DNA of 64,000 bases from Thalia democratica (lineage: Eukaryota). The stretch's first letter is position 1; the number at the start of each line of letters is the position of its first letter. Below the pieces are notes generated by a model that did not search any database, was not told the origin of the DNA, and was given only the letters and a program-made list of their open reading frames with translations. Positions 2,533 to 26,600 of this stretch are shown one piece after another. Made by a program: the position numbers and the translations under genes. The DNA lies in NCBI GenBank assembly GCA_965202585.1, contig OZ241833.1, positions 44,392,001-44,456,000 of the forward strand. Reading direction: 5' to 3'.

Positions 2533-2627
2533 CAAATAAATATATTTGTACGTATAGGCTCAAATAGTGCAAATGAAAAATGTAAGGAATGATTAGAAAA
2601 TGTGCAAAATAAGATTAATAAAAGTTT

Positions 2628-5600
2628 TTATTTGTTTTCAAACTCTTCAAGGGTCTCCAGTAGCTTTTCGTTCTGTAAAATAATTTAATTTGTTTAAATC
2701 TATGCATTACTCGAAATACCATTTACAAAATATTTAGTATTAACCGTAACTGTGACAAAAATAGTTGTTACAGTTAACACAAGGCTGTTTTCATATATTA
2801 AACCTTGTGAAATTTTTTTCTTAACTTATTTGAAAATCAATATAAAACTGATTTAAATTTTATTCAAACACACCTCATTTAGTAGCTTACTCTCGTCATT
2901 TTTAAGGTTTGATAAATTTTCAACAGTTTTGTCAACTACCGCCTTCATTTTACCTTCGGATTTGGTTGCTAGTTTTTCCATTGCATTCTGTATTTACGTT
3001 GTTTCATTAGATTATCTTTAGAGTAGTAATATTAGTGAGTAACACCTAACAGACATCAATATAAAATAGTTTTTTTTTAAGTAAGTTTTATATACTTTTT
3101 TTAAGTTCGATAGTTTTCATAACACAAACCTTGTTACATTGCTTGGTTTTTTGAGGAAAAAAAAGGGATATACTTATTTTTATTTAAATACCACTTTTGA
3201 GCATACATATCACAATGTTATGTTTTTAGCAATTAGTAAAGCTTAACCGATTTTTAAAGGCAGCTAGCTTTCTAATTGTCAGGTAATAAAGCTTTTTCTC
3301 GCATTTAAGTTCTTTCAACTTGTCTCACCTTAATTTTAGCAGCTTGTTTCTGCTCACCACTTATATCTCCTTCAACTTCTTCCTCGAGACTTTCCAGCAT
3401 CTCGTTTATGGAGTTCTGCAACTTCTCAGGGATCTCGTCTTCATCTGGGAGTTCCTTCAAACCAGCTTCAACGCTCTCTTTGAAGTTTTCATTTGAATCT
3501 AATTCCTGTGGTTGACAATTTAGGAATTAAATTGTTTCGTGTTTGTTGTGAAAGTTTTACCAAGCGAGAACTTTGTTTAATTTCAGTTACACCGTGTTTA
3601 AGATAAAAAAACAATTAAGTGTTTAAAAATTAAGTGTTTAAACAATTAAGTGTTTAAAAATTTGATGAAAAATACAGTTTAAGAATTTATGTGATTATAG
3701 CTAAAACAATGTATAATAAGATATTAATACAAATTATACACTTACAAATGATTCAACAAACCTGTTTAACTTTCTCATCGATGCTCTCAATCTCCTTTTC
3801 ATCTTCCAAATCACCTTCTTCAATCTCACCAATCAGATCGTTCACCCTCCTCTCGATATTGATCACCTCACTGCTTCCACCACTTGAGGAGCAGCAGAGC
3901 ACCCTCACCTCGTAGTCCTCGCACACGGGGTGGGTGGTCTGCTTGCTTCCCTCGCACAACAGACCCTGATCGGTGTCACAGCTCACCACCTGCCACTCCT
4001 TGTACTTTTCAAAGTCCTCCACGTTGCCTCCCACAGGCCTGCACTCGATGTCCACAGGGTTGGAACAGACCATGTCGCCCATGTGGGCGAAGGTCTCGTT
4101 GTCGTCCCTGTACGGTAATTTAGGAGTATCAGAGTCGATCCATGATGTCCACTCGCAAGTGATTGTGGTTGTTTCTGGCACGGTTGTGGTTGGTACTGTA
4201 GTTGCCGGTGTCGTGGTAGTTAGGTCGTGGGTTATGATTTCAGGGGTGGTAGTTGTCGGAGCTACGGTGGTTGTTGTAGCTTCTGTTGTAGTGGTGGATT
4301 TTGTAGTGGTAGTAGCTTCTGTAGTGGTTGTAGCTTCTGTCGTTGTAGTGGTTGCTTCTGTTGTAGTGGTCATATCTCCACTTCCGCTGCCAGACTCTTC
4401 TTCTTCAGTCGTGGTTGTTGGAGCCACAGTAGTTGTGGTTGCTTCGGAAATGGTTGTCACTTCTACGGTCGTGGTAGGAGCTTGCGTGGTAGTGGTGGCA
4501 ACTGTTGTTGTCGTCGCCTCTGTGGTAGTAGTCATATCTCCACTGCCGCTACCAGATTCCTCTTCAGTAGTTGTTTCAGCTACGGTAGTAGTCGTAGGAG
4601 CTGCAGTAGTAGTGGTCGCTTGAGTTGTTGTGGTCGCCACAGTAGTTGTTACGTCACCGCTACCTGACCCAGACTCTTCTTCTGTTGTTGTAGTTGCAGC
4701 CTCAGTAGTTGTCGTTGGGGCTGGTGTAGTAGTGGCAGCTATAGTAGTAGTTGTTGCCTCTGTAGTGGTAGTTGCTTCGGTTGTAGTTGTTACATCTCCA
4801 CTACCTGAACCAGACTCTTCTTCAGTGGTTGTAGTTGCTGCCTCTGTCGTGGTGGTTGCTTTGGGAGTGGTGGTAGTGTCCTCTACGGTTGTAGTTGTTG
4901 GTGCCACTGTAGTCGTAGTAGCCTCAGTTGTTGTAGTAACTACGTCTCCGCTGCCCGAACCTGACTCCTCTTCAGTTGTAGTTTCAGCCACGGTGGTGGT
5001 TGTAGGAACCACAGTTGTTGTGGTGGCTTCTGTAGTTGTGGTTGCTTGTGTAGTAGTTGTTGCCACGGGGGTCGTTGCTTCTCCGCTTCCGCTACCTGAT
5101 CCAGATTCCTCTTCCTCAGCAGTTGTAGTTTCAGCTACTGTTGTTGTAGTAGGAGCGGCGGTAGTTGTGGTTGCTTCTGTAGTGGTTGTCGTTTGAACAG
5201 TTGTAGTTGTCGGAGCTTCAGTCGTCTCTTCACCGCTACCTGAACCAGAACCGGATTCTTCCGCTTCTGTGGTCGTTGTAGGAGCAACTGTTGTAGTAGT
5301 TGCTTCTGGATTTGTAGTTGCTTCTACGGTTGTGGTCGTTGCTTGAGTAGTCGTAGTTGCTACTGGGGTAGTGACATCACCACTGCCAGAGCCGGATTCT
5401 TCTTCAGTTGTGGTAGTAGGAGCTACAGTAGTCGTAGTTTGAGCTTGAGTTGTTTCAGCTTCAGTACTAGTGGTAGCTTCTGTGGTTGTTGTTGCCACAG
5501 GAGTGGTTGCTTCTCCGCTTCCGCTACCTGAGCCAGACTCTTCTTCTTCAGTCGTAGTTTCAACTACGGTGGTTGTGGTTGGGGCTTCTGTGGTTGTCGT

Positions 5601-8600
5601 TGCTTCTGTAATAGTAGCTGTCGTTGTCGTAGGAGCTACAGTTGTTTCTTCACCGCTTCCACTACCAGACTCTTCTACCTCTGTAGTTGTAGTTTCAACT
5701 ACTGTTGTCGTTGTCGGTGCTACAGTGGTTGTAGTAGCTTCTGTTGTTGTTGCTTCACTTGTAGTTGTAGCAACTTCTCCACTACCACTTCCAGATTCTT
5801 CATCTTCAGTTGTTGTAGTTGGAGCAACAGTGGTCGTTGTTCTAACTGGGGTTGTTGTTTCTGCTTCTGTTGTGGTGGTAGCTTCTGTTGTGGTTGTAGC
5901 AACTTCTCCGCTACCAGAGCCGGATTCCTCTTCGGTGGTGGTCGTAGGGGCCTGGGTTGTTGTAGCGGCCACAGTAGTAGTTGTTGCCGCTTCTGTTGTG
6001 GTTGTTGCCTCTGTGGTAGTGGTCATATCTCCACTACCGCTTCCTGATTCTTCCTCTTCTGTAGTTGTCGTTGGTGCAACAGTCGTAGTTGTTGCTGCTT
6101 CAGTAGTAGTAGTTGATTCTGTAGTGGTAGTCATTTCACCGCTACCGCTTCCGGATTCTTCCTCAGTAGTCGGTGCTGGCGTGGTAGCCACTGTTGTGGT
6201 AACTTCCTCGGTGGTTGTTGTTACTGGAACTGTCGTAGTTGTTGTTGCCATTCCGGTTGTTGTTGTAGCTGCTTCTGTGGTGGTAACATCCCCGCTACCG
6301 CTACCAGATTCCTCCTCTTCTGTCGTGGTAGTTGGAGCTACAGTTGTCGTTGTCGGTGCTACAGTGGTTGTAGTAGCTTCTGTAGTTGTTGTTGCCTCTG
6401 TAGTTGTAGTAACTTCCCCACTTCCTGAACCAGATTCTTCTTCTTCAGTTGTAGTAGTTGGAGCTACAGTGGTCGTTGTTCTAACCGGGGTTGTTGTTTC
6501 TGCTTCTGTAGTCGTGGTAGCTTCTGTTGTGGTTGTAGCCTCTGTCGTAGTAACAACTTCTCCGCTACCCGAACCAGATTCCTCTTCCTCAGTCGTGGTT
6601 GTAGGCGCTACTGTAGTTGTGGTTTTAGCTTGGGTAGTCGTTGCTTTGACTGTGGTGGTAGTTGCCTCGGTTGTGGTAGTTGCCTCTCCGCTACCACTTC
6701 CAGATTCTTCTTCAGTTGTAGTCGTAGGTGCCTGAGCTGTTGTAGTTGCTGCAGTTGTTGTTGTTCTAACAGGAGTCGTGGTTTCAGCTTCTGTTGTGGT
6801 GGTAGCTACAGTTGTTGTCGTTGCTTCTGTAGTCGTAGTAGCTCTCGTTGTAGTTGTAACTACATCTCCGCTTCCTGAGCCAGATTCTTCTTCCTCAGTT
6901 GTCGTAGTTGGCGCCACAGTGGTTGTTGTTCTTTGAGCAGTTGTGGTTCTTACAGGAGTCGTCGTAGTAGCTACAGTTGTCGTAGTTTCGACTTTGGTTG
7001 TGGTAGTAGGAGCTTCAGTTGTCTCTTCACCGCTACCAGATCCCGACTCTTCCTCCTCTGTGGTAGTGGTTGGCGCCACAGTGGTAGTTGTTCTTACAGG
7101 AGTCGTAGTTTCTGCTTGAGTAGTTGTAGTCGTAGATGCCACAGTGGTCTCCTCTTCGCCTGAGCCCGATCCAGACATCTCTTCAGTGGTGGTTGTTGGA
7201 GCTGCAGTGGTAGTTGTCTGAACCACTGTTGTTGTGGTGGGAGCTTCGGTGGTGGTGGTGGTTTGTGGAGGCACTGTTGGAGGCTTGGGCACGTCGTCGT
7301 TGGTGCAAGTTGGTGTGCATCCGCAAGATAAGACGTCTTCGTACTCGTATAATACTTCAGTTCCGTTCCTGCACTTCAGAGATGCGTACTTGATGTCCAT
7401 GGAAGTCGGATTGCAGCAGGAACAACCTCCTTCGCCTTTAAAACAAAAAGTGTTTGAAATATCTTCCTTATATGGTTAAAAAAAGCAATAAAAAGAGTAT
7501 TTGAAAACTTTAATTACTCATATAAAGATATATGAACTTGAGTATCATAATGACATCATAAGAAAACGAATAAGTTTAAATATACAGATATTTTATAAAA
7601 AACCAAACACACTAACCTTCAAGCGGTGAGTATTTTCCCCTGCAAAAACCGTCACAGTACGAGTGAGCTACCGTGTTAGTCGAAACGCACTCATCCACGA
7701 CGAGGTACTCAAGCGTTACGTGACGCTGACACTCGAAGCACTCGTTGTACTGACACTTGAGGCAGCACCCGTCATCGCTGGTTATGACGTCACCGCCGTT
7801 CGTCACGCACGAGTCGGCATCGAACGGAGGGCACGGGTTCTTGAAGCAGGTCTCCTCGTGGAATCCTGAATCTTCCGAGTGGGAGTCTCCTGAGCAGTAA
7901 CAGGTGTGGCATGCGTCGGGGTTCCATGAAGAACCCGGCTGAAAATTGGTTGTTTATGAACCAATAATTGTTTTTATAGTATATAACAGAGTAAATTAAA
8001 GTAACGTTTGCTTAACTAAAGTTTACAATAAACGGTACTGCGGTTGTAAATAAAAGCAGCTAAAAAGGATAATATAAGATAATGTATGCCCATCAAATTG
8101 AAATATGTGTACAGAATTTATGGGCTTTTCACTTTATATTTCGAAAACAACTATATTTATGTCTATATACTTTAAAATAATTAGTACAATAGCATTACAA
8201 TAACTGCATGAATTCAGACTTGACGAAAAAAAATACAGTTGTAATCCAACTTACAGGTTTGGCCATTCCGTCGTCGCAACATACATCATCGGGGACGCAG
8301 CTCAGCACCGGGCAGCAACCCTCAACAGTTTCAACAAGCACGTGACAAGCGGGACACGTGGGAATGACGAGCGGTGGGCAGGTGTAGTTGGTGTGCACTA
8401 TGTGGGTTCCACCGGCACCAGGCTTGTTCTTGCACACGAAACCCAAGCACGTTTTCTCGTTCTCCCGACTTTCTCCTATCTGAGGTGTTACGTTTTAGTT
8501 ATAGTTAATATTTGCTAGTTATTATATTTAACAGTGTGTGAACCGCGGTACTAAAAAGTTTGAGGCAATTTTTTTATTTTCTTGTTGTACTTTTAGCTTT

Positions 8601-11600
8601 ATATGTTTAATAGTTAGATATTTTCATTTAAGTTTCAAAAATCTAAAATTTTTGAACCATTACTACTACATGAACAATAAATTAAAAATTCAATGTTTTA
8701 ATTACTTAGCCTATTTCATACTTTTATAAAACAAAATGATCAAAAACCAAGCTTGATATACTTTAAGTATTGATAGTATTTAGCATTTTTTAGAATAGAA
8801 TAAAATCTTCAAAAACCAACATCCATGCACTTGTTGTCGCCATGGTGATGCGGCACGTGACAACCGGTTGCCACGCAACTTCCGCAGCAATCCCCTTCGT
8901 TTGTGACGTAATCGTGGCAGGGCGGGCACCTGGTGTCGCACTTTGTGACGACACAGTGAACGTTCAAACACATTGTGACGTCATCGTTTGTTTCCGGTTG
9001 GCACTGGCATTCGGTGCAAACGTTTGGTTTCCACTCGTCGCCAGGCTGTTAACAACAATAAACAAAATAAATTTTTTATTATTTTATAAAATTAGTAATA
9101 AACATTTTGTTCTCTAATATCAATATTTTTTCAGTTTTCGTTAGAAGTAACTCAGTTTAAAAAATATATAATGTTTTCCTTTGTATTCTTTTTGTACTTC
9201 CGATTTACAGACAAAGTTTACAAAAGGCCTACTTTAACATATAAATAACTAAGACAAATTTGAGTAGGTAAAACCTTAACAAGTATCACAAACTGGTTCT
9301 AACAAATAATCATCAAGCATGTTTTGTGTGGTTTTCCAATAAATAATTAATTTTTAGGGATGAACAACTTTTTTGAGTAATATTTTTGTATAGTTTATTT
9401 TAACAAAAACCAACATATTTGATGGTGTTGTTGGTGTAGCAGACATTTAATGGGGTGCATGTAGTATGATGGCATCCACAATAATCAACTTCTACAGTCA
9501 TCTGCTCACACGGTGAACAACTAACTACATCCGCCTTACATTTGTTACACTCTGTTTGTAAATATTGTTAATTTATTTACAAGTATTTTTAGTATTGTTC
9601 AACTGTTAATTTTATAAAGTCAAGTTTAGTTCTACTACAGTTTCAAATAAATTATAATATCCATAGTAATTCATCCATAAAAACATTACATCAGTGTTTT
9701 TAGTTTTAAGTCAAACAGAAGCAACAAAAACTTATCAAAAAGTCTATTTGATTAACTGCGCAAAGCTTTTCAAACAAAGAAAAATAAAATAACACGCACC
9801 ACATGAGTATTCAGGGCAACAATCGGTTTCCTGAGCAACAACGTGTTCAAGTGGTCCGCATGTAGGTGGTTTGGGACACGGGTTTCTGCCCTGGTCGCAT
9901 TTACATTTGTACTCTGGTATGCACTGGTCGTCCACTTTGGCTGGTACCTTTCCGGGTCCGCACGCAGGGATTTCCACTAGCGGGCAGTCCTCTGTGCCTT
10001 TCTCCATGTCGTAGTTGCATACTGTTATTAAAAGTTATCTTTTTTTTTTTTGATAATACTATTAGAGCTAGCTATTATTAACATTTATAGTTTTACTTTG
10101 ATTTGTGGTCAGGCTAAATGATGAAAACTTTAATTCTAAAAAGTAAACATAATTTATAGACAAAAACATTAGCAGATAAAACAGTTTTATACTTAATATA
10201 ACTATTTACATAAGAATCAGAAAACTTTAGTCATTTTACGCTAAAAGCTTGAGATGTATTGTAAGAGCGATAACATTTATAGACTTACAACTTATAAGCA
10301 TAAAATCCAAAAACTTGTTCACACTAACCGCACTCGTATTCGGGACAGCAAGGTTCTGACGTCACCACCCTCATCGCGTCATAGCAACTACCGCATTGGG
10401 GAGGGTTGGGGTCGTGTCCCTTGGGGCAGGACACCTTGTTCTCAACTATTTCGTTGCCATGCGTGCAAGACGCTATGGTGCAGTTGTCCACGTACCATGA
10501 CTCCCCTATCTGTTTCGGAATAAAAATATTTGTTAAAATGAGAACTCTGAATTTTCTTTAACATTTGTATTCATAAGACTTACTGGTGCTAGCTGTTAAA
10601 TGCGAAACAGGTAGTTATGTTTAAAGTTACTAATTTGATAAGTTATTTTAAAATCTTTTTTTTTAAGCAATCATAGTTAATTATTATTCCAATTTTTTTT
10701 TTGTAATATTCTAAGGCAACTCTAAAAGTTATAAAACCATTCTTTACCTAATTAAATTTTTTTTATTATTTCATAAGTTTTTAAACACCCCATACAGCAT
10801 TGAAAGCAATCATTGTACCGGTCTTCATATAAAGTTTGTAAATATAGTATATAGAACACCGAACTTCATAAGTGTTGTTGTACGCATCAATGCATTTTAT
10901 ATAACTAATTATCACAACAATGAACCTCGTAAGTGTTGTTGTACGCATCAATGCACTTGGTGTCGCACTTCCAGCAGCATCCGTCGTCGGTGGGGACGAT
11001 CTGGCCTCCCACCTTCTTGCAACCCTCCTCGTCGAAATGGGGGCAGTACTTGTGGTCGCAGGTGAACCTGTTGAAGCCCGTGTCCTCGTCCTTGCTCCAG
11101 AGACACACGCACGTGGTGCAAGAGTCCATCGGCCAAGTTTCGTTCGGCTGTTGATTTGAAAATAATGTCATTTAATAAAAGGAAGGTGTAGTTAAGATAG
11201 CTAAATACATATATAAACTTCTTGCAATAGAAAAAATTAATATTGAAAATTTAAACTTTTATTTAGTTATATGATTACTAGTATTTAAGGTTAGTAAATA
11301 AGAAATAAACCATAAAAGTTTATATCAAGTGTAAAGCTTTTTTGAATAATAAACAAAAAATAGGTTTTTTATCTAAATTACGATTGTTTATAAGAAACGT
11401 TATTTATATATAATAGATAGTTATATTTTATTATATTCTGCTAGCCTGTTTACACAAAAACAATAGAACAACTAACCTGTTTAACAAACATGCCATCAAC
11501 GCAGCACACGTCATCGGGCACGCACTCGTACTTGGGGCAGCAACCGTCCTGCACTGTGGTCAGTTTGTAGCACGAGTCGCACTTGACGTCTTCGAGCGGT

Positions 11601-14600
11601 GGACAGGACATGTCATTCTGCTGAACATTTGTGGATCCGTCAGGAAGGAGTTGGCAGGTCTTTGAAGAGCAAGATGAATGGTCTGGCCATGATTCTCCTA
11701 TCTGTAAAATTAAGCTTTAGCTAGTAAGTATGCTATACAATGACCTAAAGTGTTTTTAAAATGTGTTAGATTTTCTCTAATAATTTAGTTCATGAGTAAG
11801 TTATGTTTGCCTACTGTTTGAATATATTTTTTGATATTTATATCTCAATAAATTCTTATATGTTCGTAGCAACTGCTAAAAGTGTTATACATTAATACAA
11901 GGCACGTCTAAACATCATTCCGTATGTTTTCTATTAAACAAATTTCAAAAGGCACAAAAAGTTCTTATTACACAAACTAACATCCTTGCACTCCTTGTTA
12001 ACGCTGCACCCTGTAGCCTTGCAAACCCCGCAACATCTTCCCTCCTCATACACGAGTTCGTGACACGGAGGGCAGTAGACGTCGCAGGTGGTCTCGAAGC
12101 ACTCGTGGTTCAAGCATCCTGAATCCTGGTGGGTGTACGATCCTGTGCACTGGCAGTTGGTGCATGGACTCGGTTGCCACGTTTCACCAGGCTGTGTTGA
12201 GAATTTTTTTTTTTGTTATCAAACAATTTTTGTTTCTTTAATGAAACTGCTTATAAGTATTTTGCTTTTTAAAACTTGAGTAGTATTGACTAGATCTGCA
12301 AAACAGTATGGGAGAAAATTTGCAATATTTAAGAAAAATGTAATCCTTAGATTTTTCTACGTTTAAACGTAACAATATACAATTTTTCATAACCATAACA
12401 CAAACTGACCAGCTTGTCGGTTCCGTTAAAACTGCAAACGTTTCTGCTTTCACAACTATAATGTTCGCATCCACAACTGTCAACTGTGGTTACTTTCTGC
12501 TCACACAATCCACATTCCGTCTTGTCTGGTCTACACTTGTTGCATTCTGTTGTGATTCAAATTGATCAAAACCGTGCAAGGTGTTTTAATTTATGTGTTT
12601 GTGGTTAATACAGTTAAAAAAGTGTTGTAGAAAAAGCGAAGCAAAACAAATCAATAGCCCTATTTATCATGCATTACTAAAATGATTAACAAGTTTCTTG
12701 AATTATTTTTTTTTTTGTTCAACTGTAAACGAAAATTCAACTTTAAGTATCAAAGCAAACTTTTATAGAACGCTAAACCACTACAAACCACAGTGATACT
12801 CAGGGCAACAATCTGTTTCCTCAGCAACGACGTGTTCCAGTGGTCCGCATGTTGGTGGTTTGGGGCACGGGTTCCTTGTATGGTTGCAGTGGCAGTGGTA
12901 CTCCGGTATGCAGGTGTCCTCGTCAACTTTGACAGGAATGTATCCCGGTCCGCATTGAGGAACTTCAACTGTGGCGCAGTTGTCTTCACCATGACCGAGG
13001 TCGTAGTTGCATACTGGTGGAATTTATTTTATTTAGTTTTTTTATGAATTATTTTTGCATTAGATTATTAAGTTTTATAATAGCGGATTATAAAAGACAG
13101 AGATAGCATTTTTTCTCCATTTTTTCAAATGAAAAAATAAAAACTTAGTATGCTAAATATCGGTTTTGTAGTTTTATTACGTAATAATAACTTATTTTCA
13201 AGTTTTAATGACAAAAGTTTTAGCTTGGTATAAAATGTATTTTATGTTTATTGAAAAATCATCACCATAGCAACTAACCACACTGGTACTCCGGGCAACA
13301 AGGGTCCGATCCCCTCACCATCTCCGCAACGTGACATTTCCCACACTCGGGTATTCCCGGGTTGTAGTCGGCCCCGCAGTATTTAGGGGTGCACACAATT
13401 TGCTGACCCTCCATACAGCTGCATATTTCGCAAGTTTCTCCCTCCGGTATCCAACTTTCTCCTAACTGTATAAAATATTTTGAACATGAATTTAAAGAAT
13501 TTATTCTTGTTAACTTTATTGAAATACTTTATTTAAATTCTTGTTAACTGTATAAAAATAAAGGTTTTAAACTTCTACAAGTTTCAAATCGGGCTTGAAT
13601 TTTATACTAAGTAGATTTCAAACTTTAAAAATAAAGTTCTAGTGAATAAAATTTTAGAGAAATTCTTATAAAAGAGAAGAACATAAAACTATATTAAATT
13701 TTATGTAATACTATTTTGTCTTTCTCAAACAGTACGTATAAATTCTTACCTGAAGGATATCACCATTGTCAGCAACGCAGTTGGTGCAGTTACTAGTAGC
13801 AACGCACTCCCCTCCAACCAAAACGGTTCCCTCCGGACAGAAGCATCCCTCCGCTGATTGTTCCTCGTAACAGGGGATTCCCGATATGAAGTCCCCGCAA
13901 GTCTTTTCGCAATCTGGTTTGCACGCTTGGTACACACGGTCCGATGGACACTCGAGTGCTGTGAAATATTTACTTTTGGTAATTATTAATAACAAAACAG
14001 AAGTTTTAACTGTTATAATTAATCTTGTAAAAAAATTGCTTTAGTTTTAGCAGTTATTTATAATAAAAGTATATTATCTTCGGGGAAAAGTTTTAGTTGA
14101 AATTTTTAATAATTTTTTTTTCAAATTCACACAAGAACAAAGCGTAATTTGCTGTTGTTTGATTTTTAACTCGGATTAACTACGTTGTAAAACACCCTCG
14201 AAAAAATTTGTATTATATGTGTTGAAATACTAAAAACAAAGGTCATCAAGTAAGTAGTTGTTTAAATAAAGTGTTTAGCCTTATTTTGTTAAAGATTTGA
14301 AACTAAAATATCAAAGTAGCAAAGACAAAAAATAACTAACGACAAAGATCATCAGATCTCCAGTCCAAGCAAACTCCCTGTTTCAAACAAGCAAGAGCGT
14401 ATCCATAAAGAGCCTCGCATACAGAGTAATTCCTGCACTCCGCTGTATCGTATGTGCAAATTTTGTAAAACTGCTCCACGTCTACTGCGTCGTGGCATGG
14501 CTGTTGAAAATTTGTAAGTCGAAGTTTTAAATATTAAGACACATGGCAAAGTTAAATTACTGTAAAACTTTAAAAGGACAATTTAAGCTTATATTGTATT

Positions 14601-17600
14601 AATTACTATCATTACATATTACGGTTATAGAAAATAAGTACAAGTTTATTCAACATGTCAAAAATTTAAAAACTTTTTTGTGTATAACAAAAAGTTTGTC
14701 AAGAATTTAAATGCTAGATAAACTTTAAAATTGGCTATGGTTCATGATGTTTATCTACCTATGAAATAAAGGTTTTAACTATTTTAACACTACAAAGATG
14801 CAAAGATATAAAAGTATATATCAAATTAAACACATATAAATCACTAACCGCGAAAACATCGGACTTGAGTATCTCGCACTTCTTATCCGGCTTGGGACGC
14901 TCGCATGTTTGTTCCTCCTTCATGCAGTCCGTCTTGTTCTCGACTACCAACCACGACATGGCGAAATCGATCACTTCCAACTCGATCGTTCCCTCTCTGT
15001 TGGTCAGCTCGTCCGATTGGTCGTTGTTACACACTCCTGTATTTTGATTGGTTTATAAATATTAGTGGTAGGTTATTTAACGTTTAAACTAAGATCAAGT
15101 GAAAACCTCTAGTTATGTTTCGCTCAATTATTTTACAATAAGTTGTGTTTTATTTGAAATTAGAGACATAATTTATGTTAAAAACTGTATAGTACATGAT
15201 GGTCTTATTTTAAACTAAGCAAAAGTAAGTAAAAAATAGCAGCAATTTACAAATGATGTAATACAACTTAACAAGCAATTTTAACAAAAAGTTATTTAAA
15301 AAAAATTCACTAACCGCAAAGTCCCTCTGTTCTGTTGAAGTAGTGTTGCCACGGCACGGCCAAGCTCCAGCTGTAATCTTCTCCTGTGTACGTCAGAGTA
15401 AGGTCTATGCTCTTGATTGTGACGTAGAAGAGAGAAATTCCCCTCAGTTCCACGTGGATGCCTGATACGTGGGTTATTGGAAGAGTGGACCAATCCAACA
15501 GTGGACCGTTGTTGAATGAGTACTATAAAATGGAATTACAAGATTAAGATGTCAATGTAAAATGAGTACTGATAAGGTAATAAACTTTAGTATATCGAAA
15601 ATATATTTTTGCTTATTTTTTTTAGCCTGAATTGTTGAAAAAGTAGATTTTCGTAAGTTTCATTATTTTTTTAAGCCAAAAACTTAAAGGTTATCCAATC
15701 TCTTACAGCAATAACTATGCTTATCAGTCTTAAAATAAAACTGATAATATTTCAATCTTATATGCAAATAAACTAACAGTGTAGTTCTTGTAAATGATCA
15801 GTGTTGTCTCGTTGTATCTGATGTACATTTTTCTTGTACAAGTCGTATCCGGTGCCTCTGGGCAGGCAACATTGTCCATCCAGATCTAATTTTATACATT
15901 TATAGTTAGTTTCTGTTTTCTAATGTTGTGTTTTCAGTTTTTTACACTAAAAATATAACTAATTGACTACTAAATTTTAAAATATCAGTATGATAAATGC
16001 TGAATTTACTTTTAGAATTTTAAATTGGTTCTATATTACTTTAAGACAGTTTCAACGCTTTTTAAACATTTAAAATGAATATACAGTACATCAATAGTTA
16101 AATAACAACATAATGGTATAAATAATAAATAATTAACTAAATATCAAAACAAACTTCGTATTCGTGAGGCCAGTTGGAGTGGTGCTCGTTCATGTCACGT
16201 GACAATACAAATGTGCAGTTTCCTTGGAACGGGTAGTAGTATCCGTCGAATGTGAAAAAGTGAGGGTCTCCTTGACCAAAGCAGTAACCTTAAATATATA
16301 ATTTGTTTAAGACTGGCACTTAAAGTATAACTTTTATTTCAATAAACTTTATGGTTTATCGAAAGTGAAAGTTGAGGGTCTCTTTGACCAAAGCAGTATC
16401 CTATTATTAGTTTTCATTGTGTCTAAAACTAGTCAGTTAGAACTTATATACAATCTTATGAGTAAAAAAACGTAAATTTTAAGACACTTACAAACATCAA
16501 GTACATTTGCAAGTAAAAACCGTCATACAAATACAACAACTACCAACATTGACACTCCCATTCACAAGAGCATCCGTCCTCCTTCATGACAGGTTGGAAC
16601 CCGTTCCTGCAAACAGGCTTGTCCTCAGGTCTGCAAACTTTTCTGACATCCTCACTTTCGATGATGCAGCTTCCATCAGGCACCTCCAAGCAGGTTGATG
16701 TGACGCATAGTGATTCGTCACCGCGCATCGGCCACGTTTCACCCGGTAAGTGGTCTCCTCCCTGTGTGTAAGAAAGATTAAAATGTATTTATACCATACT
16801 AAATTCGCATGTTAAATTTCTTTGTTGGTGTGTTTGAGAAAAGAAACAATTTTTATTTTTTATAGATAACTAAACATTTATGTTTGTTAATAACCTCTGA
16901 GAACACTATTTTAAGCTTCAAAACTGACATGACTGTTTTAATATATTTTTACAAGCCGATCACAATTAGCTTTTATACTACTTCTATAGGTTTGTATTTC
17001 TTTCATCGTCATTTTGTTGCAGTTTTATACTATTGAAAGCAATACTTATAATAAAACATCACATACGTTAGAGTCGACGCATTTGCACGGTTCCGGTTGA
17101 GTTGTTGTTGTGGGGGCAGGTGTTGTGGTGGTCCTGGGCGTAGTGGTGGTCTTGGGTCTGGTTGTCGTGGTAGCCGGGATGGTTGTCGTGGTAACGGGGG
17201 GAGGGGTGGGTTTTGGCGGGCACTCGCTCACGTGTTTGCATTTCATTTGTTCATAATCGAACACCTCGTCTGATAATAAAAATTTTAGATGAGTATTTTA
17301 TTTAAATAAAGTTTAAAAGTTTTATCACAAAGTTAAAAGTTTTAATTACGTACAGTTTACTAATAATAAAATATTTAAATTTTTTATTAGTTACAAAGAA
17401 AATGTTATTACCATACGTACTCAACAAAAAAGTTACTCTTTTAATTAAACTATTAGTAAAAACCAGTTTTACATTTGGTACATAAATTAAAATATCATAT
17501 CTATATTTTTATCATTAATATAGAAAGACATCATTTAATAACAATAGTTATCAAACCGGGTTTGCATTCGGTGTAGCAGCCCTCCAAGTTCTTCCACGGG

Positions 17601-20600
17601 CAATCCTTGGGTTTTGGGTCGTCGCAGGTGGGTGGGCACGGGTTTCCACAGGGTTCGTACTTCCACGAGCACGTGCCGTTCACCCCGAAATCGGGGGTTC
17701 CCCACGTTGGGTCGTAAGTCTCGCACATGATGGGGCAAATTTCGTTGCTACGCCAACTGATACAAACTCCTGCCTCGCTACAAGCCTGTTGGGTGGTAAA
17801 GTTTAATTAGTTTTCTATTAAGTTTCTGTTTTATTTATTGTTTTATATAACTATTAAGAATGTCATATTGTTATTACGTGGGTTACTTTTTTATACATTA
17901 TTTACTACTTTCTGACACCTTTTTTGTGCCTTTTATGTTTATAGAGCGTTTATTGTAAATTTTTGACACATATAACACTTTTACATTAATTTTGTTTTAA
18001 ACAAATATCGTTATATATGTTTGTTTGATTTTTTTTTAATACATTATTGTTTAACACTTATTTATCCTTTAAATTTAAGTTTTTAAAAGTTATTTGTATT
18101 AGTATTAATTTACATTGACCTTTCACTGTGAGCCTTAAATAAGATTGTTAAAGATATCAAATAACTGAAGCATAACATTTAGCCATTCGACGAAAATAAA
18201 AACATACAACTATAATACAAACCTGCGCATATGCAGCCACTGCGTTACAGAAGCACTCGCAGTCCCCACCGTCAGTACACCCGCATGTGTCGAACAGGCA
18301 GTCCTCGTAGAAAGTCGTGGGGTCCACCACTGGGTGGCACTCTTCAAAAACGTCCCTGATGATCACCGCGCATTTCTCGTGCGCCCATTCTTGACGTTCT
18401 GGGTTCACCTCGCACGGGTTGCCCGGGGAACTGCCGTCTGGGCAGGACTCTGATGTCTGTTTAAGAATTTGTGTTTTTTATATACTTTTTTTTGATGTTA
18501 ATTTTTTTGTGTAGTAGTTGTTTTTTTTTAACTTGTTTCTTTATTGTTTATAAAAAAGACTAAAACATAATTTCAAATTTTTTTTTTCTGTTTCAGGTAA
18601 AATTAAATTCTAACAAAAACTTTTGCTTGAAACTTTGGCAACAAAACAGTTTATGCAAAACAATTAAACTTTCTGTGTGAAAAATTTACCTTCCAATCGT
18701 TACCGAAGTCAGTTTCTGAAGTTATTTGATCTCCGTCTCTTCCTTCGAAATCATTGGATGAATCTCCATCAAAATCTCCGCACAAGCCTCTGACCTTGTT
18801 CATATGTTTAGCTCCCAGTTTCACTTTTACCTGGAACAATGTTGATAGTTTAATCAGAAGTTTATCTAATGATAACAAAAAGTCCCAAGCATTTGAAATT
18901 CAAGATAAGTTTCAGTTGTTAATACTGAGTAAGCAACATCACTTTAATTCTACATAAACAATTTAGTTAAGTTTGCTACAAGCATTTTGTTTTTTTTTTC
19001 TCAATCACTTTTATACAATATTATGTAATCGAAGTTAGATAGTTCATGAAAAACTACGTAAATAAAACCTAAAACTAGCATGTCAGCAATCAAATTAGTT
19101 ATTAATTTTTCACAAACCTTGGTGCTGGAATCCCACATGACATCGATACCATCATTAGTTTCTATGATGTGGTAGATGGATCCCTTCCTGACCGTGTAAT
19201 ACTTTCCTGTGGGGATCTTTCCAAAACCACCGTTCTCTGCGTCATATTCCTGGATTATCTGTATGTTTTGTTTTATTACAAAAGTTTTGTTCTTATTGAT
19301 GGTACAAAAAGACATGCTTAAATTAACTGAAAATTTATATGGTATACAATAAATAAGTTTATTAATTTGGGTTTTAAAACATCAGTAGTAACGCTTAACA
19401 AAAAGAGCTTAATTCTTTTATTTTACGTTAACACTACACTTTATTTTTTTACTTATTCTAACAAAAATAAAATTTCAAAAACTAAACGTTATCTGCTGAG
19501 TTTTAAGCCTTATCTAAAAGTTATGACTAACTGGTTCATTTTCGCCCCTTGTGAGACGGAACACTTTGCTGTACCAGTAAAAGGTTACTGATTTGGAGCA
19601 GGTAAGATGCTTGTTGGCATCTCCACACGGTACATTCTCAACCTTAACCCTGAATGTTCCGTTGTTCTCTACCATCACGTATGAACAGTCTCCCTGTGAG
19701 AAAGTGATTTGTTATTATTTATGTTTTAAATGAAACTGTGTATTGATTAGTTTGGGTATAATTATTTTGTTAATAATCGTTATTTTCTATGATCAGTACA
19801 TTTTCGGAAATATATAAATATATTGCTTTGATTAGTTTTCAACAAACTAAAGCTCTTGTTTTCTTTTAAGTTCTAAACTAACTCTAACAAGTAAAGATGT
19901 TATAGCTGTAAGTCATGTTTGAGACAAACTTCTTAGTTTGAAAAATCAAACAAACCTGGAAATCGTATTCCCTGCCATCGAAAGTTTTGTAATGGGGATC
20001 TCCCCAAGCCGAGCACTCCTGGGGGCACTGCTTCTCCGTGCACACCCACGCTCCCCCTTCGCAAGTACAGTCGTTGCAATCCTGCTTGATGCTGCTTCCT
20101 GATTGGTGGATTTCACCGTTGTGCTCGCACGGACAATGAGATTGCTTCACACATTTACCTGATCTCTCGTCTGTTGTTTGGTTTATATATTAAAAAAAGT
20201 TTTTCAATTCTTTCTATCAGTAGAAATTATGTTAATCATTTTCTATATTGATAAAACCTTAATTCATCTTATAATCAGTTAAAATAACGGAAGATTTAGA
20301 TTTAAACATGTATGTATACTTTTACTGACTTTTATTTAAGCAAGATTAATTTTATTACCATTCATTTAATTAAATTTTTTTAACTTTTAAATTTACTTAT
20401 ATACATTTCTTTAATAAAATTTGAAAATTCAATATTTATGTAAATTATAGTACCAAAACATTTTTCAAATATTAGTTGTTAAAACTAATTACAAACTATC
20501 CTACCAAGTATTTTTCCTTTGGGACAGGCGCATCCAGGGGTACAATACTTCTCATCTACGGAGCAGAAAAGGTTGGAAGTCTGACAAGTTGATAGGCAAC

Positions 20601-23600
20601 CAACCCCCTTGTGGTTGTCGTGGCAACCCACGAATTCCATGGGGGCCTCGCACTTGGTCGGTTCCTCTTGGATGAGCTCACACTCAAGTTTTCCACCGGT
20701 GCACACGCTGGTGAAGTTGGTAAGTTGTTAATCTAGTAAGCTTTTTTTTATATTAGATACGATTTTACGAAAACGCATACAGAATTTAGACAGACTAGTA
20801 TATTATTTAAAAGCAAAAAAAATCAAGTTTCATTTATATAAAATTAAGTTATTCTTTCAATTTAGTTTAATTATTTAAACATAGTTTTAGGACTTCAAAC
20901 GTCTTTTTTACATAGTACTTTAAAGCAAGTTAATGTTTAAAAAGAATTTTAACTGAGCGCTGTAAATGTCATTAAAAATCGTTTAGGTAGCAAGTTCATG
21001 CTTTGCAACCGTAATGCAAAAAATTCCACAACCATAAAACCAACCAAGCGTATGAATCCCTTTCAACCTTCTCTCCTGGTTGGTAAACCTCACCGTTGTC
21101 ATAACACTGGCATTCTTCCTTAGCAACGCACTCCCCACCCTGCAGGAGGGTACCTGGTGGGCAGTAGCAACCCGGGTAGCAACCGTGGGTGCACTCACTG
21201 ACCCCCAGCATTTTGCAGGAAGATTGGCAGACCTCACCGCATTCGCTGTACATCAGACCGTCAGGGCAGGTTACAGCTGAAGAATATAAAATATTTTTAT
21301 AAGAAGTACAAAGTAGAAGTGTATTTAGTTTATATTAGGCGAGCTACGTATAAAACTTCACAATTTTCATGATGATGAATAAATTTATTTTTTATACCTC
21401 AAACTATACTTCTGTTAAACTTTCAAAACTCCCACAAAAAATAAATGTTGTAACCATTTGAATTGTTTTATGGGTTTTATAAAAAAAAGTGTTTTAACTC
21501 ACGACAAACAGTAGCGTTTCTCCAGTTATTAATAATTCCCTGTTTGGCACACTGCCTCGCGTAATCTGAAAATATTTCGCAAGCGCACTCCATTTCGTTT
21601 GTACATTCACATACATCTTGTCTGTTGGGAAAAATAAGAAGTTAATAGTTTGTCAAACATAGTAGATTTGGAACTAATCAGTATTTGACTTATGAATGAC
21701 AAGTACAAAACTGATTAAGTTTTTAGGTTTGAAAACTATTAAGATAATTCCCGTGGTTTTCATTCATAAAAAATTTTATCGAAAATTGACGACACTTACT
21801 AACAAAATAACAGTTAATACAAACTACTACATATATTAAAAAAAGAAAGAAAGAAGTTTAATTAAATAATACCAACTTGCACTTGGAGTAGGCGACGTTG
21901 GGATCAACAGCGGAGTGGCAACTAGCGAACACATCAGATTTCAAAACACCGCAAATTTTCTCCGCTTGATGGCGCTTCGTGACGTCATCGAGACACGTGA
22001 CTGGCGGGGAGGCGGGAGGCATGTCGCCGCAACTTCCTGATGCCTGCAAGCAATAAGTTATGTAAGCATTTTATTTGTCTAAAGGTATTATCGTTACTCA
22101 AACGTCGAAGCACTTTTTAGCAAGTGTTGACTTTTTTCTTAAGTTTTGTTCTTTCTAGAGATTTTAAGTTATTGTTTAAAATTATTTTAAACTAAAATTT
22201 GTCGTATTTATACAACCAAGAAAGTAGACTACACAACTATATTTAAAAAAGTAATATTGTTATTGTTAAAAACTTATCAAATGCTTTATTATTGTACTAT
22301 TTATAAACAAAACAAACCTTCCAGGAGTTACCAAAGTTGGTGGTGTCAGAGGTGAGGGAGTTCTTTGAAGTCCTGAGATCATCTGTTTTCAGCTGATTAA
22401 AGTTTCCGCAAAGACCGCACACCTTAGACTGCCACTCTGGTGCAAGCTGTTTGAGTGATAAAATACTAAATAGAGTGAAATATTGTATAGTAATAGCTTG
22501 GATAAAGTTTTTGTTTTACGAATAAAACTAACGAGTTTTGAAATTTGTCTTTTAGTGAAAAAATTATGAAAAAGTCTTAATGACCGTTTTCTAGTTTATG
22601 CTAATTTTATGACATTAAAATAAACGCTTGTCTAAGCCTGTTTTTAATGAAGATTTTAATTCAAACTAACTCTTAGATAGACACGCATTTCTCCGTCCCA
22701 TTCGATTTCTATTCCGTTGTCAGTTTTCAATAATGTCATCATATCACTGATACTTTCGACATTTACACCACCTAAGTTAAACAAGTTGTATCATTTTTAA
22801 GGCTACTAGTATTTAATATTTTTCAATAATTTCATCATATCGCTTAAGATTTAAACATTTACATTACCTAGGTTGATATTAAAACTCGAAAATATTGTTC
22901 GAAAGCTAATATAACTTTACTTTTAACGATTAAAATAGCTACTTTGGTAAATTTTAAACACTTAATGCTTTTCAAAATATTTACAAAACTTGAAGAAATT
23001 TAATAATAAGTATATAAAATAGAAAGAGTTTTTTTTTAAATGTTGATTTTTTTTTTATATCTTAAATTACAAACCATGTTCATAAGGTAACTCGATTGTA
23101 GCGCCATCTACCGAAACTACACCCTTCTGTTCCAATTTGAAAGTGGTCTGGACGCTTGGACTGGTCTTCAGTACCAAAGTCGCCGCTTTCACGCAAGTCT
23201 TGCCCGGCTGGTCACCACATTCCACGTTCTCTACTACAACCTGTAAATTAGTGAATATTTTTTTAATAAGTAGCTAAAAAACTAAGATGTTTTTGAATAA
23301 AAATAACTAGCTAAACTGCTATCACTTTGTTACAACTTTAACTAACAGAGGTGCAATAGCTAATCTTAGACTTACAGCGAGTTTGAACAATTATAAAGTT
23401 TAGGTTTAAGTTTAGAAATGTTTAAATAACGAAAAGTCAATATAAAACAGCAAAAGTGAACTTTTACTTCCCTGTACCCACAGTGCAACAATGTATTGAA
23501 AATATTATATGTATATAGTATTATTAAACAAATAAGACTATTAAATAAAACTAACAGCGAAAGTAAACTGATCCTTTCCACTACCCACAGTGCACCCATC

Positions 23601-26600
23601 AGTAGATAGAACGTACTTGCAAGTACCGCTGAACGTGTAATCGACCCCGTCAAACGTGTTGAAATGGGGATCTCCCAAAGCCGAACATTCACCCCAACAA
23701 GGTGTCGACTCGCACAACCACTCGCCAGAATTGCATGTGCTGATTAGGAAATTATTTTTTATAAGTTTAAGTAGAAAACTTTGATAAAAACAGGCTAATT
23801 TACTGATAACAATATTGAATAAAAATTATTTAAAAGTGTAAGGTAACAAAATAAGTTAAGTGTACTTGTTATCGCAAATGTTCATAAAATATTTTATATG
23901 TACCGTTTGAAATACCAAGAAGGTTTATGTGAAACTGTTAGATAAAAAACAAATATTTTTGCATACAAAAAAAAACGTTTAAGTGCCTTGATGTACAGAA
24001 AATCGTTAACAAAATAGGCTCATAAAAATTGTTAATACGAGTTAAAACCAGTTTTTACAGCACTTTTGAACTACCAAAAAATCTATTTGATAATAAAAGT
24101 GAATGTTTAAATCTTAAAAGTTGAACATCGTTGTTATATAACTATAAAATAATACACAAAAATTTTGTGCCCAATGTTGCCAATAAATCTTAACTCCAAG
24201 TGTCGACAATAGAGAGCAAGATGCTGATAGCGATTTAACACCCGTTAAGCAATCAAACACAAGCATTCTAGCGTGCGCAAACACAAGCTGAAATTTACAC
24301 AGGGGTTTGGAAATATAAAAGTTTGCTCAGTGGGTGTGTTAAAACTTTTACTTGAAATGAAGTTGTTTTGTTTGAGCTTTTAAGACGTGAGAGAGTTTGA
24401 ACGGTGTCACAATGAGCCAACGTCATAATCGTAATCGATATACGTCATAGTAATAATTGAATGCGTCGCAATAATAATTTGTACGCGTAGTTGCATAAGT
24501 AATAATTGACTTTGTGACGTATAAACTTAATTCTTATAATATGTTGTCCTGAAAGTTATTTAGCTTGAACTTCTAATACTCCATAGTAATAATTATTTGC
24601 TTAGCTAGTCAAACCAATTTTAACACTTTGACCTGTAAAAACGTGAGAGTGAACTGGAAATTATGTTAGTCAAATAAAAGAAGAACAAGTAAGCTGTTAC
24701 GAAAAACATCTTTGAACTTTGCCACTTCTTGTTGTAATTTAATCTGATTGGTCTTGTTTTGATCTGATTATATTCAAAGCTTTTAAAAAATTTGTAATAT
24801 ATGTATGTGCACAAGCTTTGTTAAAACTTAAAACCTTGATCAAAAAAGGAAATTAACATTTTAAAGATAATAACAACATTTTAAAATAAAATGTTTTTGA
24901 AAGAATTGTTAGTTGTAGTGTTAGTTAAACTTTTATAAGTTAAAGGATAACTATCGATTAGTTTATAAGTCTTTAATTGTTTATTTAGTGCTTTATACTT
25001 GGCTATTTTCGTTTATTGTTTCGATTTTAACTTAAAACAAACTTATTTAACTTCTAACTGAAAGTTAATAAAACCTATACACAAGTTATAATTCCAGTAA
25101 ATTCTCTTAACAACTGTAGTAAACAAACTGAAATGAAAGAGTAAACATTTTAAAATTAACTTTCCTGCGTCGTAAAATGACCATAAAAGTTTAAACCACG
25201 CGTAGAATACGTGATACTAGAAAGTTTGTTTTAGTTTGATGTTATAAAATGATTTATATGACTTGGTGTTTGAAATTTGCTTTATTAATTAACTTGACAA
25301 CTTAACATTTACAGTATGACAATTTAAACTTTATACATGTATATTTCAATAAGCACCCGCGTAAGGTAACTTATATCTAGGTTTGCAATATATACGATAA
25401 AAATAGATGATATCTTTAAAATTACTTGAAAATATAGGCACTTAAAACTTTATTGTTTAACAATGGAAGATATTTTCTAGATTAATTATAGTCTGCATAA
25501 AACTTTTCTCAGCTTAAAATGACCAGAAAACAAGTAAAAACGTTTTATAAAAATGCACAATTCGATATCTAGACAACACTTTTTTGAAAATTTTTTCAAT
25601 GTAAAAAAAGTTTGACAAATAAACGAAACAGTTTAAATTATTGAAACATAATTTAAGCATGTCAAAAACTTCTTTTATCAATTCTTAGTAATATAAAACA
25701 ACATTTAACTATACCATCATGAACACTTACTAAGAAACAAAACATAAACACTAAAAAAACAACTAACACGTCACAAAACCAACCATTGTTCGCAGCTTCC
25801 TTCCCTCACTTGCCCGGATGCAAACTCAACACCCTCGTGCACGCACTTGCACTCGTCTTGTGGCACGCAACTGTCACCTTCCAGCACGTGGCCGTCAGGG
25901 CAGAAGCAGCCGTCCAAGCAAGTTGATGGACAGTCCATCTCCTCGTCCTTGTTCTTGCAGGTTGGAACGCACGGGTTTCCGCACTCCTTGTACACCATGT
26001 TGGTCGGACACGTTTTTGCTGAAATAGTTAATAATAATAAGAAGAATTACTAAATTTACAAATCATGGTATAAAAGTGATGCTTAAAGAACTTTAAAAAT
26101 TGTGCTCAGTGCTAAGTAAAATAAAAAAATGTTTATTTATTTTATGTATTATTCATTTTCACTTAAACAACTTGAAAAACTCTGCTTAAATAAAAAGTTC
26201 TTTTAAACATCATTAAAAACACTTTTTCAAAAGTATTGTAGTGTATTATGAACACTCATAAGAAAGATATTTATTATAAAAAACAATTACAAGCAACTCA
26301 CGACAAAACTCGTCACTCCTCCACACTCCATCGAACACCCCATCACCCATCTGCACGCACATCCTCGAGTATGACGTCACAGCGTCGCACACACACGCCT
26401 CCAAGCGGCCGGATGCACAGCTGCATATTAATTGGACGCACATCTGTTCGAGCACTTCGGCTCCCACCTTGCAGTTGAATGATGAGCCCTGGTTGGCTAG
26501 ATACGTACAATCACGTGTCACGTTCTGTTGTGACGTAGTAATGATCAATTATGACATAGTAATAGTGTAATTTGACGTAATAATGATAAGTTATGTCGTA

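What the first reader, a model, noticed from the sequence alone, without database searches (positions are those of the whole stretch)
2628..7938. Mucin with rearranged topology: the large glycosylated domain lies C-terminal to an internal cystine knot
In MUC2/MUC5AC/MUC5B/MUC6, otogelin and VWF the cystine knot is the last domain, and in the mucins the big PTS domain sits centrally after D3 (established). Here the second half of an intact 11-Cys knot (GGCSCCNP...LKCRNG...LSCGCTPTC) runs without a stop into ~1,050 aa of Thr-rich sequence, then CysD and a tail, all in exon 3762-7435 (seen directly). Inference: D3-D3 and CK-CK disulfides would build a compact backbone, with pairs of glycan brushes hanging off each CK node as side arms instead of lying within the backbone. 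That would be a different gel architecture, and it is the strongest candidate for an undescribed system here.
Basis: partly seen in the sequence, partly recalled or inferred. Interest (0 to 1): 0.9.

Follow-up and report, generated by a model that had tools for sequence, protein, structure and literature searches.

The report
Mucin with sugar-coated arm after its knot
A highly expressed gel-forming mucin of a planktonic tunicate carries its large sugar-bearing domain after the dimer-forming cystine knot, not in the middle of the chain, and related tunicate genes show the same order, so mucus polymers can be built in a second way.

Summary
On the minus strand, exon 7435-3762 encodes the second half of an 11-Cys cystine knot (CK). 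It runs without a stop into 1,049 aa of Thr-rich sequence holding 21 acidic SGSGSG motifs, then one CysD (Pfam Mucin2_WxxW, E 9e-18) and an acidic tail that continues through three small exons to a TAA at 2628.

Marine metatranscriptomes show the three predicted GT..AG splice joints (7617|7435, 3762|3505, 3329|2987). Depth is even across the knot-to-PTS boundary and zero in an intron.

The gene is a Ciona Ci-GFM1-type mucin: EGF x4, FN2, CBM14, EGF, D1-D2-D'D3, a 45-aa central PTS, D4, a VWC array and CK. So the post-knot module is an addition, not a relocated central domain.

The same order, CK then linker or PTS then CysD, sits on single ORFs in four loci from three other assemblies. A fifth relative is truncated inside its post-knot PTS. 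The linker ranges from about 33 to about 480 aa, several with the same acidic Ser-Gly motif.

The cysteines that form interchain bonds in the VWF knot and MUC2 D3 are all conserved. A disulfide-linked backbone with paired glycan (possibly glycosaminoglycan) arms is therefore plausible but untested.

I found no paper describing this order. Another window of this scan flagged the SG motifs in this same stretch. Verdict: new variant of a known kind.

The parts
7617..7938 (-). Exon encoding a VWC domain and the first half of the cystine knot (first knot Cys codon starts at 7740). It ends in phase 1.
   Evidence: Translation. Relatives found with this exon. Alignment to the VWF CK.
7436..7616 (-). 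Intron (GT..AG) that splits the cystine knot.
   Evidence: Splice-site check. The joint 7434/7616 is seen in RNA contigs of runs X4, X5 and X8.
7305..7435 (-). Second half of the cystine knot (GGCSCC...KC...SCGC...TC), including the equivalents of VWF Cys2771, 2773 and 2811.
4158..7304 (-). Post-knot mucin domain of 1,049 aa, about 46% Thr, with 21 copies of E(2-4)-SGSGSG-E/D spaced 36-60 aa apart.
   Evidence: Each of the 21 motifs is encoded by a different DNA string. RNA depth is continuous across it.
3891..4157 (-). CysD domain with a WxxW motif (CEWTSW...).
   Evidence: Pfam PF13330, E 9e-18, full profile length. It aligns to the CysD of relatives.
3762..3890 (-). Start of the acidic tail, running to the splice donor CAG|GT at 3762.
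   Evidence: Joint 3504/3761 in RNA.
3329..3505 (-). Tail exon.
   Evidence: Joints 3504/3761 and 2987/3329 in RNA contigs. In frame.
2874..2987 (-). Tail exon.
   Evidence: Joint 2987/3329 in RNA. In frame.
2628..2672 (-). Last coding exon, ending in the TAA stop at 2630-2628. Intron 2673-2873 is predicted (GT..AG) and only weakly supported by RNA.
   Evidence: An X8 contig covers 2613-2674.
17049..17297 (-). Small central PTS (about 45 aa of Thr/Pro) after D3, at the canonical position.
   Evidence: ORF translations. It matches the roughly 50-aa central PTS reported for Ci-GFM1 (PMC6109156).
17534..18477 (-). C8-3 and TIL-3 exons of D3, holding the equivalents of the MUC2 interchain cysteines C1088 (GGDCEC) and C1130 ([12 protein letters not shown]).
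   Evidence: PDB alignments to MUC2 and MUC5AC D3. Residue roles from PMC6739602.
29336..34126 (-). N-terminal cassette upstream of VWD1: four EGF domains, FN2 (31900-32100), CBM_14 (30081-30320) and one more EGF.
   Evidence: Pfam.
8198..29047 (-). D1, D2, D'D3 and D4 assemblies (VWD-C8-TIL) and an array of VWC-like exons leading to the knot.
   Evidence: Pfam. Exon order matches relatives.

Best explanation
This is the 3' end of a secreted, Ci-GFM1-type gel-forming mucin of a planktonic tunicate.

Shown here:
- One mRNA encodes the VWC array, an intact 11-Cys cystine knot, a 1,049-aa Thr-rich domain with 21 acidic Ser-Gly motifs, one CysD and a 154-aa acidic tail.
- The order CK, then linker or PTS, then CysD is conserved in related genes. 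The linker has expanded by tandem repeats to different lengths in different lineages.
- The peptide motif E(n)-SGSGSG-E/D is under selection.

Inferred:
- Chains dimerise tail-to-tail through the knot in the ER and head-to-head through D3, as in VWF and MUC2.
- Because the central PTS is only about 45 aa, the disulfide-linked backbone is made almost entirely of folded Cys-rich domains.
- Two long O-glycosylated arms leave each knot dimer next to the last interchain cysteine.
- The acidic Ser-Gly motifs are glycosaminoglycan attachment sites, which would make the arms mucin-proteoglycan hybrids.
- The terminal CysD and acidic tail give the arm ends a folded, interaction-capable cap.
For: Sequence and splice structure.

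RNA: three GT..AG joints in metatranscriptome contigs. Depth is similar in the upstream exon (1,766) and the PTS (1,200-4,500), and zero in an intron.

Domains: CysD at E 9e-18. The knot matches the family profile at E 7e-58, and that profile hits VWF CK 4NT5 at 1e-20 and the MUC2 C-terminus 7QCU at 2e-14. All 11 Cys align.

Relatives with Cys_knot before Mucin2_WxxW on one ORF:
- P0001
- P0005 and P0013
- P0014
- L001:13526-16012, with about 470 aa of PTS and 11 EEPEESGSG repeats
P0015 has CK followed by PTS with an EETGSGE motif before it is truncated. Their upstream exons are C8, TIL and VWC, so these are also the 3' ends of mucin genes.

Selection on the motif: 21 of 21 SGSGSG copies use different codon strings, including TCN/AGY serine switches.

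The D3 interchain cysteine equivalents are present. The overall architecture equals that of Ci-GFM1.
Against: - Nothing here shows protein, dimers, glycans or glycosaminoglycans.
- RNA support comes from short contigs (about 100 nt) of mixed plankton samples at 90-99% identity. No single molecule is shown to span the knot, PTS and CysD.
- The short-linker relatives (P0001, P0005) lack the Ser-Gly motif, so it is not essential to the module.
- The tail is poorly conserved and shows no significant heptad pattern.
- Proteolytic release of the post-knot part cannot be excluded. MUC2's own short post-knot tail is cut by furin (PMC10082768), although no R-x-K/R-R site exists here.
- The roles of VWF Cys2771, 2773 and 2811 as interchain bonds are recalled from the 4NT5 paper, not re-derived.
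Confidence: 0.72

Rival explanations
1. The order is real but already known. Annotated tunicate mucins, possibly including Ciona Ci-GFM1 itself, already carry PTS and CysD after the knot in public databases, and papers simply draw the knot as the last domain.
For: P0003 and P0015 are UniParc entries (UPI0000524F57, UPI00089DC1EE). They come from an already sequenced animal, probably an ascidian, and show CK followed by PTS. The protein libraries searched hold almost no annotated tunicate proteins, so a survey of annotated models was not possible.
Against: Nakashima 2018 describes Ci-GFM1 (2,880 aa, cloned by RT-PCR and RACE) with a 'C-terminal' CK. Lang 2016, the MucXS paper and the MUC2-C paper all place the knot last. 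Phrase searches for a post-knot domain found nothing relevant.
Confidence: 0.2
2. The post-knot part is cut off during secretion. The gene then yields two products: a VWF-like polymer ending at the knot, and a free mucin/proteoglycan with a CysD.
For: The short post-knot tail of MUC2 is removed by furin (PMC10082768). A single RR exists in the tail after CysD.
Against: There is no dibasic or R-x-K/R-R site between the knot and the PTS, and no GDPH motif. The residues just after the knot (NDD/NDI-P..P) are conserved between the window and P0005 but are not a known cleavage motif.
Confidence: 0.1
3. It is an artefact: an assembly misjoin, or a gene model that fuses a mucin ending at the knot with a downstream PTS-CysD gene.
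For: Long repeats are prone to misassembly. Metatranscriptome contigs show many non-canonical joints inside the PTS.
Against: The second half of the knot and the PTS share one open exon with no stop. RNA joints link both knot halves. An exact 326-nt contig of run X1 (library type not on record, probably DNA because it includes the intron) spans 7350-7675. Four loci from three other assemblies have the same junction on single ORFs. The internal joints lack GT..AG and look like repeat-length variants.
Confidence: 0.03

Closest known systems
Ci-GFM1, the gel-forming mucin of the Ciona intestinalis gut chitin membrane (Nakashima et al. 2018, PMC6109156)
   Same: FN2 and a chitin-binding domain ahead of D1; D1, D2, D'D3; a central PTS of only about 50 aa; D4; VWC domains; a knot with conserved interchain cysteines.
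   Different: It is described as 2,880 aa with the knot as the C-terminal domain. Here about 1,290 aa (PTS with Ser-Gly motifs, CysD, acidic tail) follow the knot. Whether Ci-GFM1 has any post-knot sequence could not be checked.
Vertebrate MUC2, MUC5AC and MUC5B
   Same: VWD-C8-TIL assemblies, D3 interchain cysteines, CysD with WxxW, VWC domains and a dimerising knot. MUC2 also has a short unstructured tail after the knot.
   Different: In vertebrates the large PTS domains and all CysDs lie between D3 and D4. The knot is effectively terminal, with a tail of about 50 aa that furin removes.
von Willebrand factor
   Same: The scaffold and the knot: profile hit to 4NT5 at E 1e-20 with all 11 Cys aligned.
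   Different: VWF has A domains instead of PTS and no CysD. It ends two residues after the last knot cysteine.
Proteoglycan core proteins with acidic Ser-Gly clusters (serglycin- or syndecan-type attachment sites; recalled from memory)
   Same: Runs of Ser-Gly flanked by Glu/Asp, repeated regularly.
   Different: Here the motifs are embedded in a Thr-rich mucin domain of a VWD/CK polymer. No glycosaminoglycan has been shown.
C-terminal peptide of the chorionic gonadotropin beta subunit (recalled from memory)
   Same: An O-glycosylated Ser/Pro-rich extension placed after a cystine-knot domain.
   Different: It is about 30 aa on a hormone subunit, not a polymer-forming mucin. This is an analogy only.

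Membership tests
Gel-forming mucin / VWF superfamily | Three N-terminal VWD-C8-TIL assemblies plus a D4 | tested here: met
   Pfam VWD, C8 and TIL hits in the expected order from 29047 down to 13714.
Gel-forming mucin / VWF superfamily | Cystine knot with 11 conserved Cys, including the interchain ones | tested here: met
   Spliced knot versus family profile, E 7e-58. The profile hits 4NT5 at 1e-20, and all Cys align.
Gel-forming mucin / VWF superfamily | The cystine knot is the last domain of the chain | tested here: not met
   About 1,290 aa follow the last knot Cys in the same reading frame and mRNA.
Gel-forming mucin / VWF superfamily | Large PTS domain, with any CysD, located between D3 and D4 | tested here: not met
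   Only about 45 aa of PTS sit there (17049-17297). The 1,049-aa PTS and the single CysD lie after the knot.
Gel-forming mucin / VWF superfamily | D3 cysteines for head-to-head multimerisation (MUC2 C1088 and C1130) | tested here: met
   GGDCEC and [12 protein letters not shown] align to MUC2 and MUC5AC D3. Residue roles from PMC6739602.
Gel-forming mucin / VWF superfamily | Dense O-glycosylation and disulfide-linked polymers | not testable with these tools
   Needs protein biochemistry.
Ci-GFM1-type tunicate mucin | FN2 and a chitin-binding domain upstream of D1, with a small central PTS | tested here: met
   fn2 E 3e-12, CBM_14 E 4e-10, 45-aa PTS exon. Compared with PMC6109156.
Ci-GFM1-type tunicate mucin | Orthology to Ci-GFM1 (LC072665) by sequence | not tested
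The supplement text holds no alignment letters.
Proteoglycan core protein | Ser-Gly attachment motifs flanked by acidic residues | tested here: met
   21 copies of E(2-4)SGSGSG[ED], kept at the peptide level by 21 different codon strings. The motif is shared with the L001 ORF, P0014 and P0015.
Proteoglycan core protein | Covalently attached glycosaminoglycan chains | not testable with these tools
   Needs a chondroitinase or heparinase shift, or mass spectrometry.

The most novel reading that the evidence does not exclude
Tunicates have a second design of gel-forming mucin. A short, fully folded, disulfide-linked backbone (D3-D3 and CK-CK) carries paired side arms at every knot node. The arms are mucin-proteoglycan hybrids capped by a CysD. 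In salps, this highly expressed polymer is a structural component of the mucous feeding filter or of the chitin-lined faecal-pellet envelope.
Probability: 0.3. Interest if true: 0.75.

Novelty: new variant of a known kind. Interest (0 to 1): 0.57.

Why it matters
Every mucin and VWF described in the papers read here places the dimerising knot at the chain end and the glycan domain inside the backbone. Models of mucus gels, and of how they expand and break, rest on that layout.

This is a conserved, strongly expressed counter-example. It shows the knot tolerates a long C-terminal extension, and it separates two roles that are fused in vertebrate mucins: load-bearing backbone and hydrated glycan brush. 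That gives a natural test case for how topology sets gel properties, and a template for engineered mucins.

If the Ser-Gly motifs carry glycosaminoglycans, it would also bridge mucins and proteoglycans.

In a salp the product may bear on mucous-net feeding or on faecal-pellet envelopes, both of which are relevant to ocean carbon export. That link is speculative.

Tried and rejected
- The exhaustive HMMER search with the VWC-CK exon gave only 12 hits, none a full-length annotated protein.
- Two word-index protein searches (P0005; the L001 ORF, region 1-170) added only P0014, P0015 and P0003, with no names or organisms. Cluster look-ups gave only UniParc ids and ENA/JGI sources.
- The ESM Atlas look-alikes were clusters with either Cys_knot or WxxW, never both. 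Scores were below 0.9, so this is only a weak hint.
- The metagenome contig scan returned three loci, all from the same species as P0005/P0013.
- Looking for the Ci-GFM1 knot sequence in the paper's supplement found nothing. No supplement text is held for Lang 2016.
- Phrase searches for a domain 'after the cystine knot' and for salp or endostyle mucins found nothing relevant.
- A coiled-coil reading of the tail was dropped: the best heptad window is not above shuffles (9% of shuffles reach it).
- A furin or GDPH cleavage reading lacks any site after the knot.
- The internal 'joints' within the PTS in RNA contigs were rejected as introns. They lack GT..AG and fit repeat-length variants or related species.
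- Structure prediction was not run. A monomer model would not test dimerisation, and the domain calls were already significant.
- The spliced knot was not sent to Pfam, to avoid typing sequence. It was tested instead with a profile built in a script.
Full report
**What is in the sequence**

The region lies on the minus strand of an AT-rich animal genome, with introns near 23% GC and exons near 50%.

Exon 7938-7617 encodes a VWC domain and the first half of a cystine knot. A 181-nt GT..AG intron (7436-7616) follows.

Exon 7435-3762 opens with the second half of the knot and continues without a stop for 1,224 codons. In order, it holds:
- 1,049 aa of Thr-rich sequence (window 7304-4158). A near-identical 1,045-aa slice is 46% Thr, 14% Glu and 10% Ala.
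- One CysD (4157-3891).
- The start of an acidic tail.

The in-frame stop at 3753 lies behind a CAG|GT donor at 3762. Splicing to 3505-3329, 2987-2874 and 2672-2628 keeps the frame open to a TAA at 2628. The result is a 1,443-aa C-terminal model.

**Is it a real knot and a real CysD?**

Pfam calls the CysD at E 9e-18 over the full profile.

The knot is split by the intron, so I tested it indirectly:
- I built a profile from eight related VWC-CK sequences (A1).
- That profile hits the VWF knot crystal structure 4NT5 at E 1e-20, the MUC2 C-terminus 7QCU at 2e-14 and norrin at about 3e-6.
- The spliced window sequence matches the same profile at E 7e-58.

All 11 cysteines align with VWF 2724-2811. 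They include the CSCC pair and the last Cys. From my memory of the 4NT5 paper, these make the three interchain disulfides. PMC10082768 confirms that the knot dimer is held by three disulfides.

**Is it transcribed as one piece?**

Three marine metatranscriptome runs (X4, X5, X8) hold this gene at 90-99% identity. Their contigs carry the joints 7434/7616, 3504/3761 and 2987/3329, each with CT..AC ends on the plus strand, which is GT..AG on the minus strand.

In X4, depth is 1,200-4,500 across 3809-7361 and 1,766 over the upstream exon. It is zero in the bin 3061-3247, which lies inside intron 2988-3328. So the signal is RNA, and the knot exon and the PTS have similar abundance.

Nothing suggests that transcripts end after the knot. 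The many other joints inside the PTS lack GT..AG and look like repeat-length variants or related species.

An exact 326-nt contig of run X1 spans 7350-7675. X1's library type is not on record. Because the contig includes the intron it is probably DNA, and it may come from the same sample as the assembly.

The main limit is that contigs are short. No single molecule is shown to span the knot, PTS and CysD.

**The whole gene**

Pfam on the upstream open pieces gives this order:

| Element | Window position |
|---|---|
| Four EGF domains | about 34126-32673 |
| FN2 | 31900-32100 |
| CBM_14 | 30081-30320 |
| EGF | 29336-29455 |
| VWD-C8-TIL x3 | 29047-17534 |
| PTS exon, about 45 aa | 17049-17297 |
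| VWD4-C8-TIL | about 16289-13714 |
| Two rounds of VWC-like exons | 13528-8198 |
| Cystine knot | 7740-7305 |

This is the layout reported for Ci-GFM1 of Ciona: FN2, a chitin-binding domain, D1-D3, a 50-aa central PTS, D4, VWC and a 'C-terminal' CK, 2,880 aa in total (PMC6109156).

The central PTS has therefore not moved. The large domain is an extra module behind the knot.

The D3 exons keep the equivalents of the MUC2 interchain cysteines C1088 (GGDCEC) and C1130 (C-x-W-x-YEPCGN).

**Relatives**

An exhaustive HMMER search with the VWC-CK exon found 12 proteins. Follow-up searches and contig look-ups gave these forms:

| Relative | Source | After the knot |
|---|---|---|
| P0001 | locus L001, plus strand | about 45-aa linker, then CysD |
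| P0005 / P0013 | loci L002, L004-L006 | about 33-aa Thr-rich linker, CysD, Gln/Ser tail |
| P0014 | locus L003 | about 110-aa PTS with an SGSGSG...EESGE cluster, then CysD |
| 828-aa ORF | L001:13526-16012, minus strand | about 470 aa made of 11 repeats ending EEPEESGSG, CysD, polar tail |
| P0015 / P0003 | UniParc entries, truncated | PTS with EETGSGE |

Pfam places Cys_knot before Mucin2_WxxW in all the complete ones. Upstream of them lie C8, TIL and the same VWC exon series, so these are the 3' ends of homologous mucin genes.

Two paralogues (P0002, P0004) end soon after the knot and have Trp in place of the first Cys of CSCC.

The module 'knot, linker, CysD, polar tail' is thus ancestral in this clade. 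The linker has grown by tandem repeats to 1,049 aa in the window's species.

The residues right after the knot also correspond: [12 protein letters not shown] here versus AC-QPNDIPELPT in P0005.

**The Ser-Gly motif**

The 21 motifs E(2-4)-SGSGSG-E/D are spaced 36-60 aa apart. Every one is encoded by a different 18-nt string, including switches between TCN and AGY serine codons. The repeats are only 67-77% alike at the DNA level.

So the motif is kept by selection on the peptide, not by recent repeat homogenisation. The same motif occurs in the post-knot PTS of three relatives.

Acidic Ser-Gly clusters are the classic glycosaminoglycan attachment signal (my knowledge, not tested here). Another reader of this scan made the same suggestion for this stretch.

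**Mechanism**

Shown here: domain order, expression, conservation, and conserved interchain cysteines.

Inferred:
- Knot-knot and D3-D3 disulfides build a backbone made almost entirely of folded domains.
- From each knot dimer two chains exit beside the last interchain Cys and form long O-glycosylated arms, possibly carrying glycosaminoglycans.
- The arms end in a CysD and a 154-aa tail with net charge -25.

The tail shows no significant heptad pattern. There is no furin-type site between the knot and the PTS. MUC2's short post-knot tail is removed by furin, so cleavage here cannot be excluded.

**Organism**

The gene is abundant in marine plankton metatranscriptomes, and its architecture is that of a tunicate mucin. 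Earlier notes of this scan suggest a salp, perhaps Thalia democratica. I did not test this.

**Novelty**

Every paper I could read places the knot last:
- Lang 2016
- Ci-GFM1
- Xenopus MucXS
- MUC2 C-terminus

Phrase searches found no description of a post-knot PTS or CysD.

The protein libraries available hold almost no annotated tunicate proteins. I could not check whether public gene models already show this order without comment; P0015 suggests at least one does.

I rate it a new variant of a known kind. It is of moderate to good interest for mucin biology.

Noticed in passing
L001:10001-16012 and L003:10001-17437: In two other assemblies, two mucin paralogues lie tail to tail (convergent), with their knot-encoding last exons 3-6 kb apart. 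One partner has the post-knot CysD. In L003 the other partner (P0002) ends soon after the knot.
   Followed up: partly
P0002 and P0004 (relatives; L003:16976-17437): The paralogues that end soon after the knot have Trp instead of the first Cys of the CSCC motif. They therefore lack one of the presumed interchain cysteines.
   Followed up: no
window 4349-6861: Metatranscriptome contigs show many non-GT..AG joints that skip 130-2,088 nt inside the PTS. These look like repeat-number variants between individuals or sister species.
   Followed up: no
window 8198-13528: The VWC-like exon series before the knot is duplicated as a block. There are two rounds of five or six exon types, and the same two rounds occur in L002 and L003.
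   Followed up: partly
window 34598-35644 (minus strand): An open 349-aa Gln/Gly/Ser/His/Trp low-complexity exon lies upstream of the EGF cassette. It may be the N-terminus of the same gene. Another reader has noted it.
   Followed up: no
window 49957-51213 (plus strand): A single 419-aa open frame with moderate GC in an otherwise AT-rich stretch. It was not examined.
   Followed up: no
window 54805-60200 (plus strand): Exons of a Ser/Thr protein kinase ([10 protein letters not shown], a catalytic-loop motif typical of the CaMK group) on the opposite strand. This is a separate gene.
   Followed up: no
window 3840-3855 (tail, ...NIERRVND...): The only dibasic site in the whole post-knot region lies just after CysD. 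MUC2's post-knot tail is cut at double-Arg motifs by furin.
   Followed up: no
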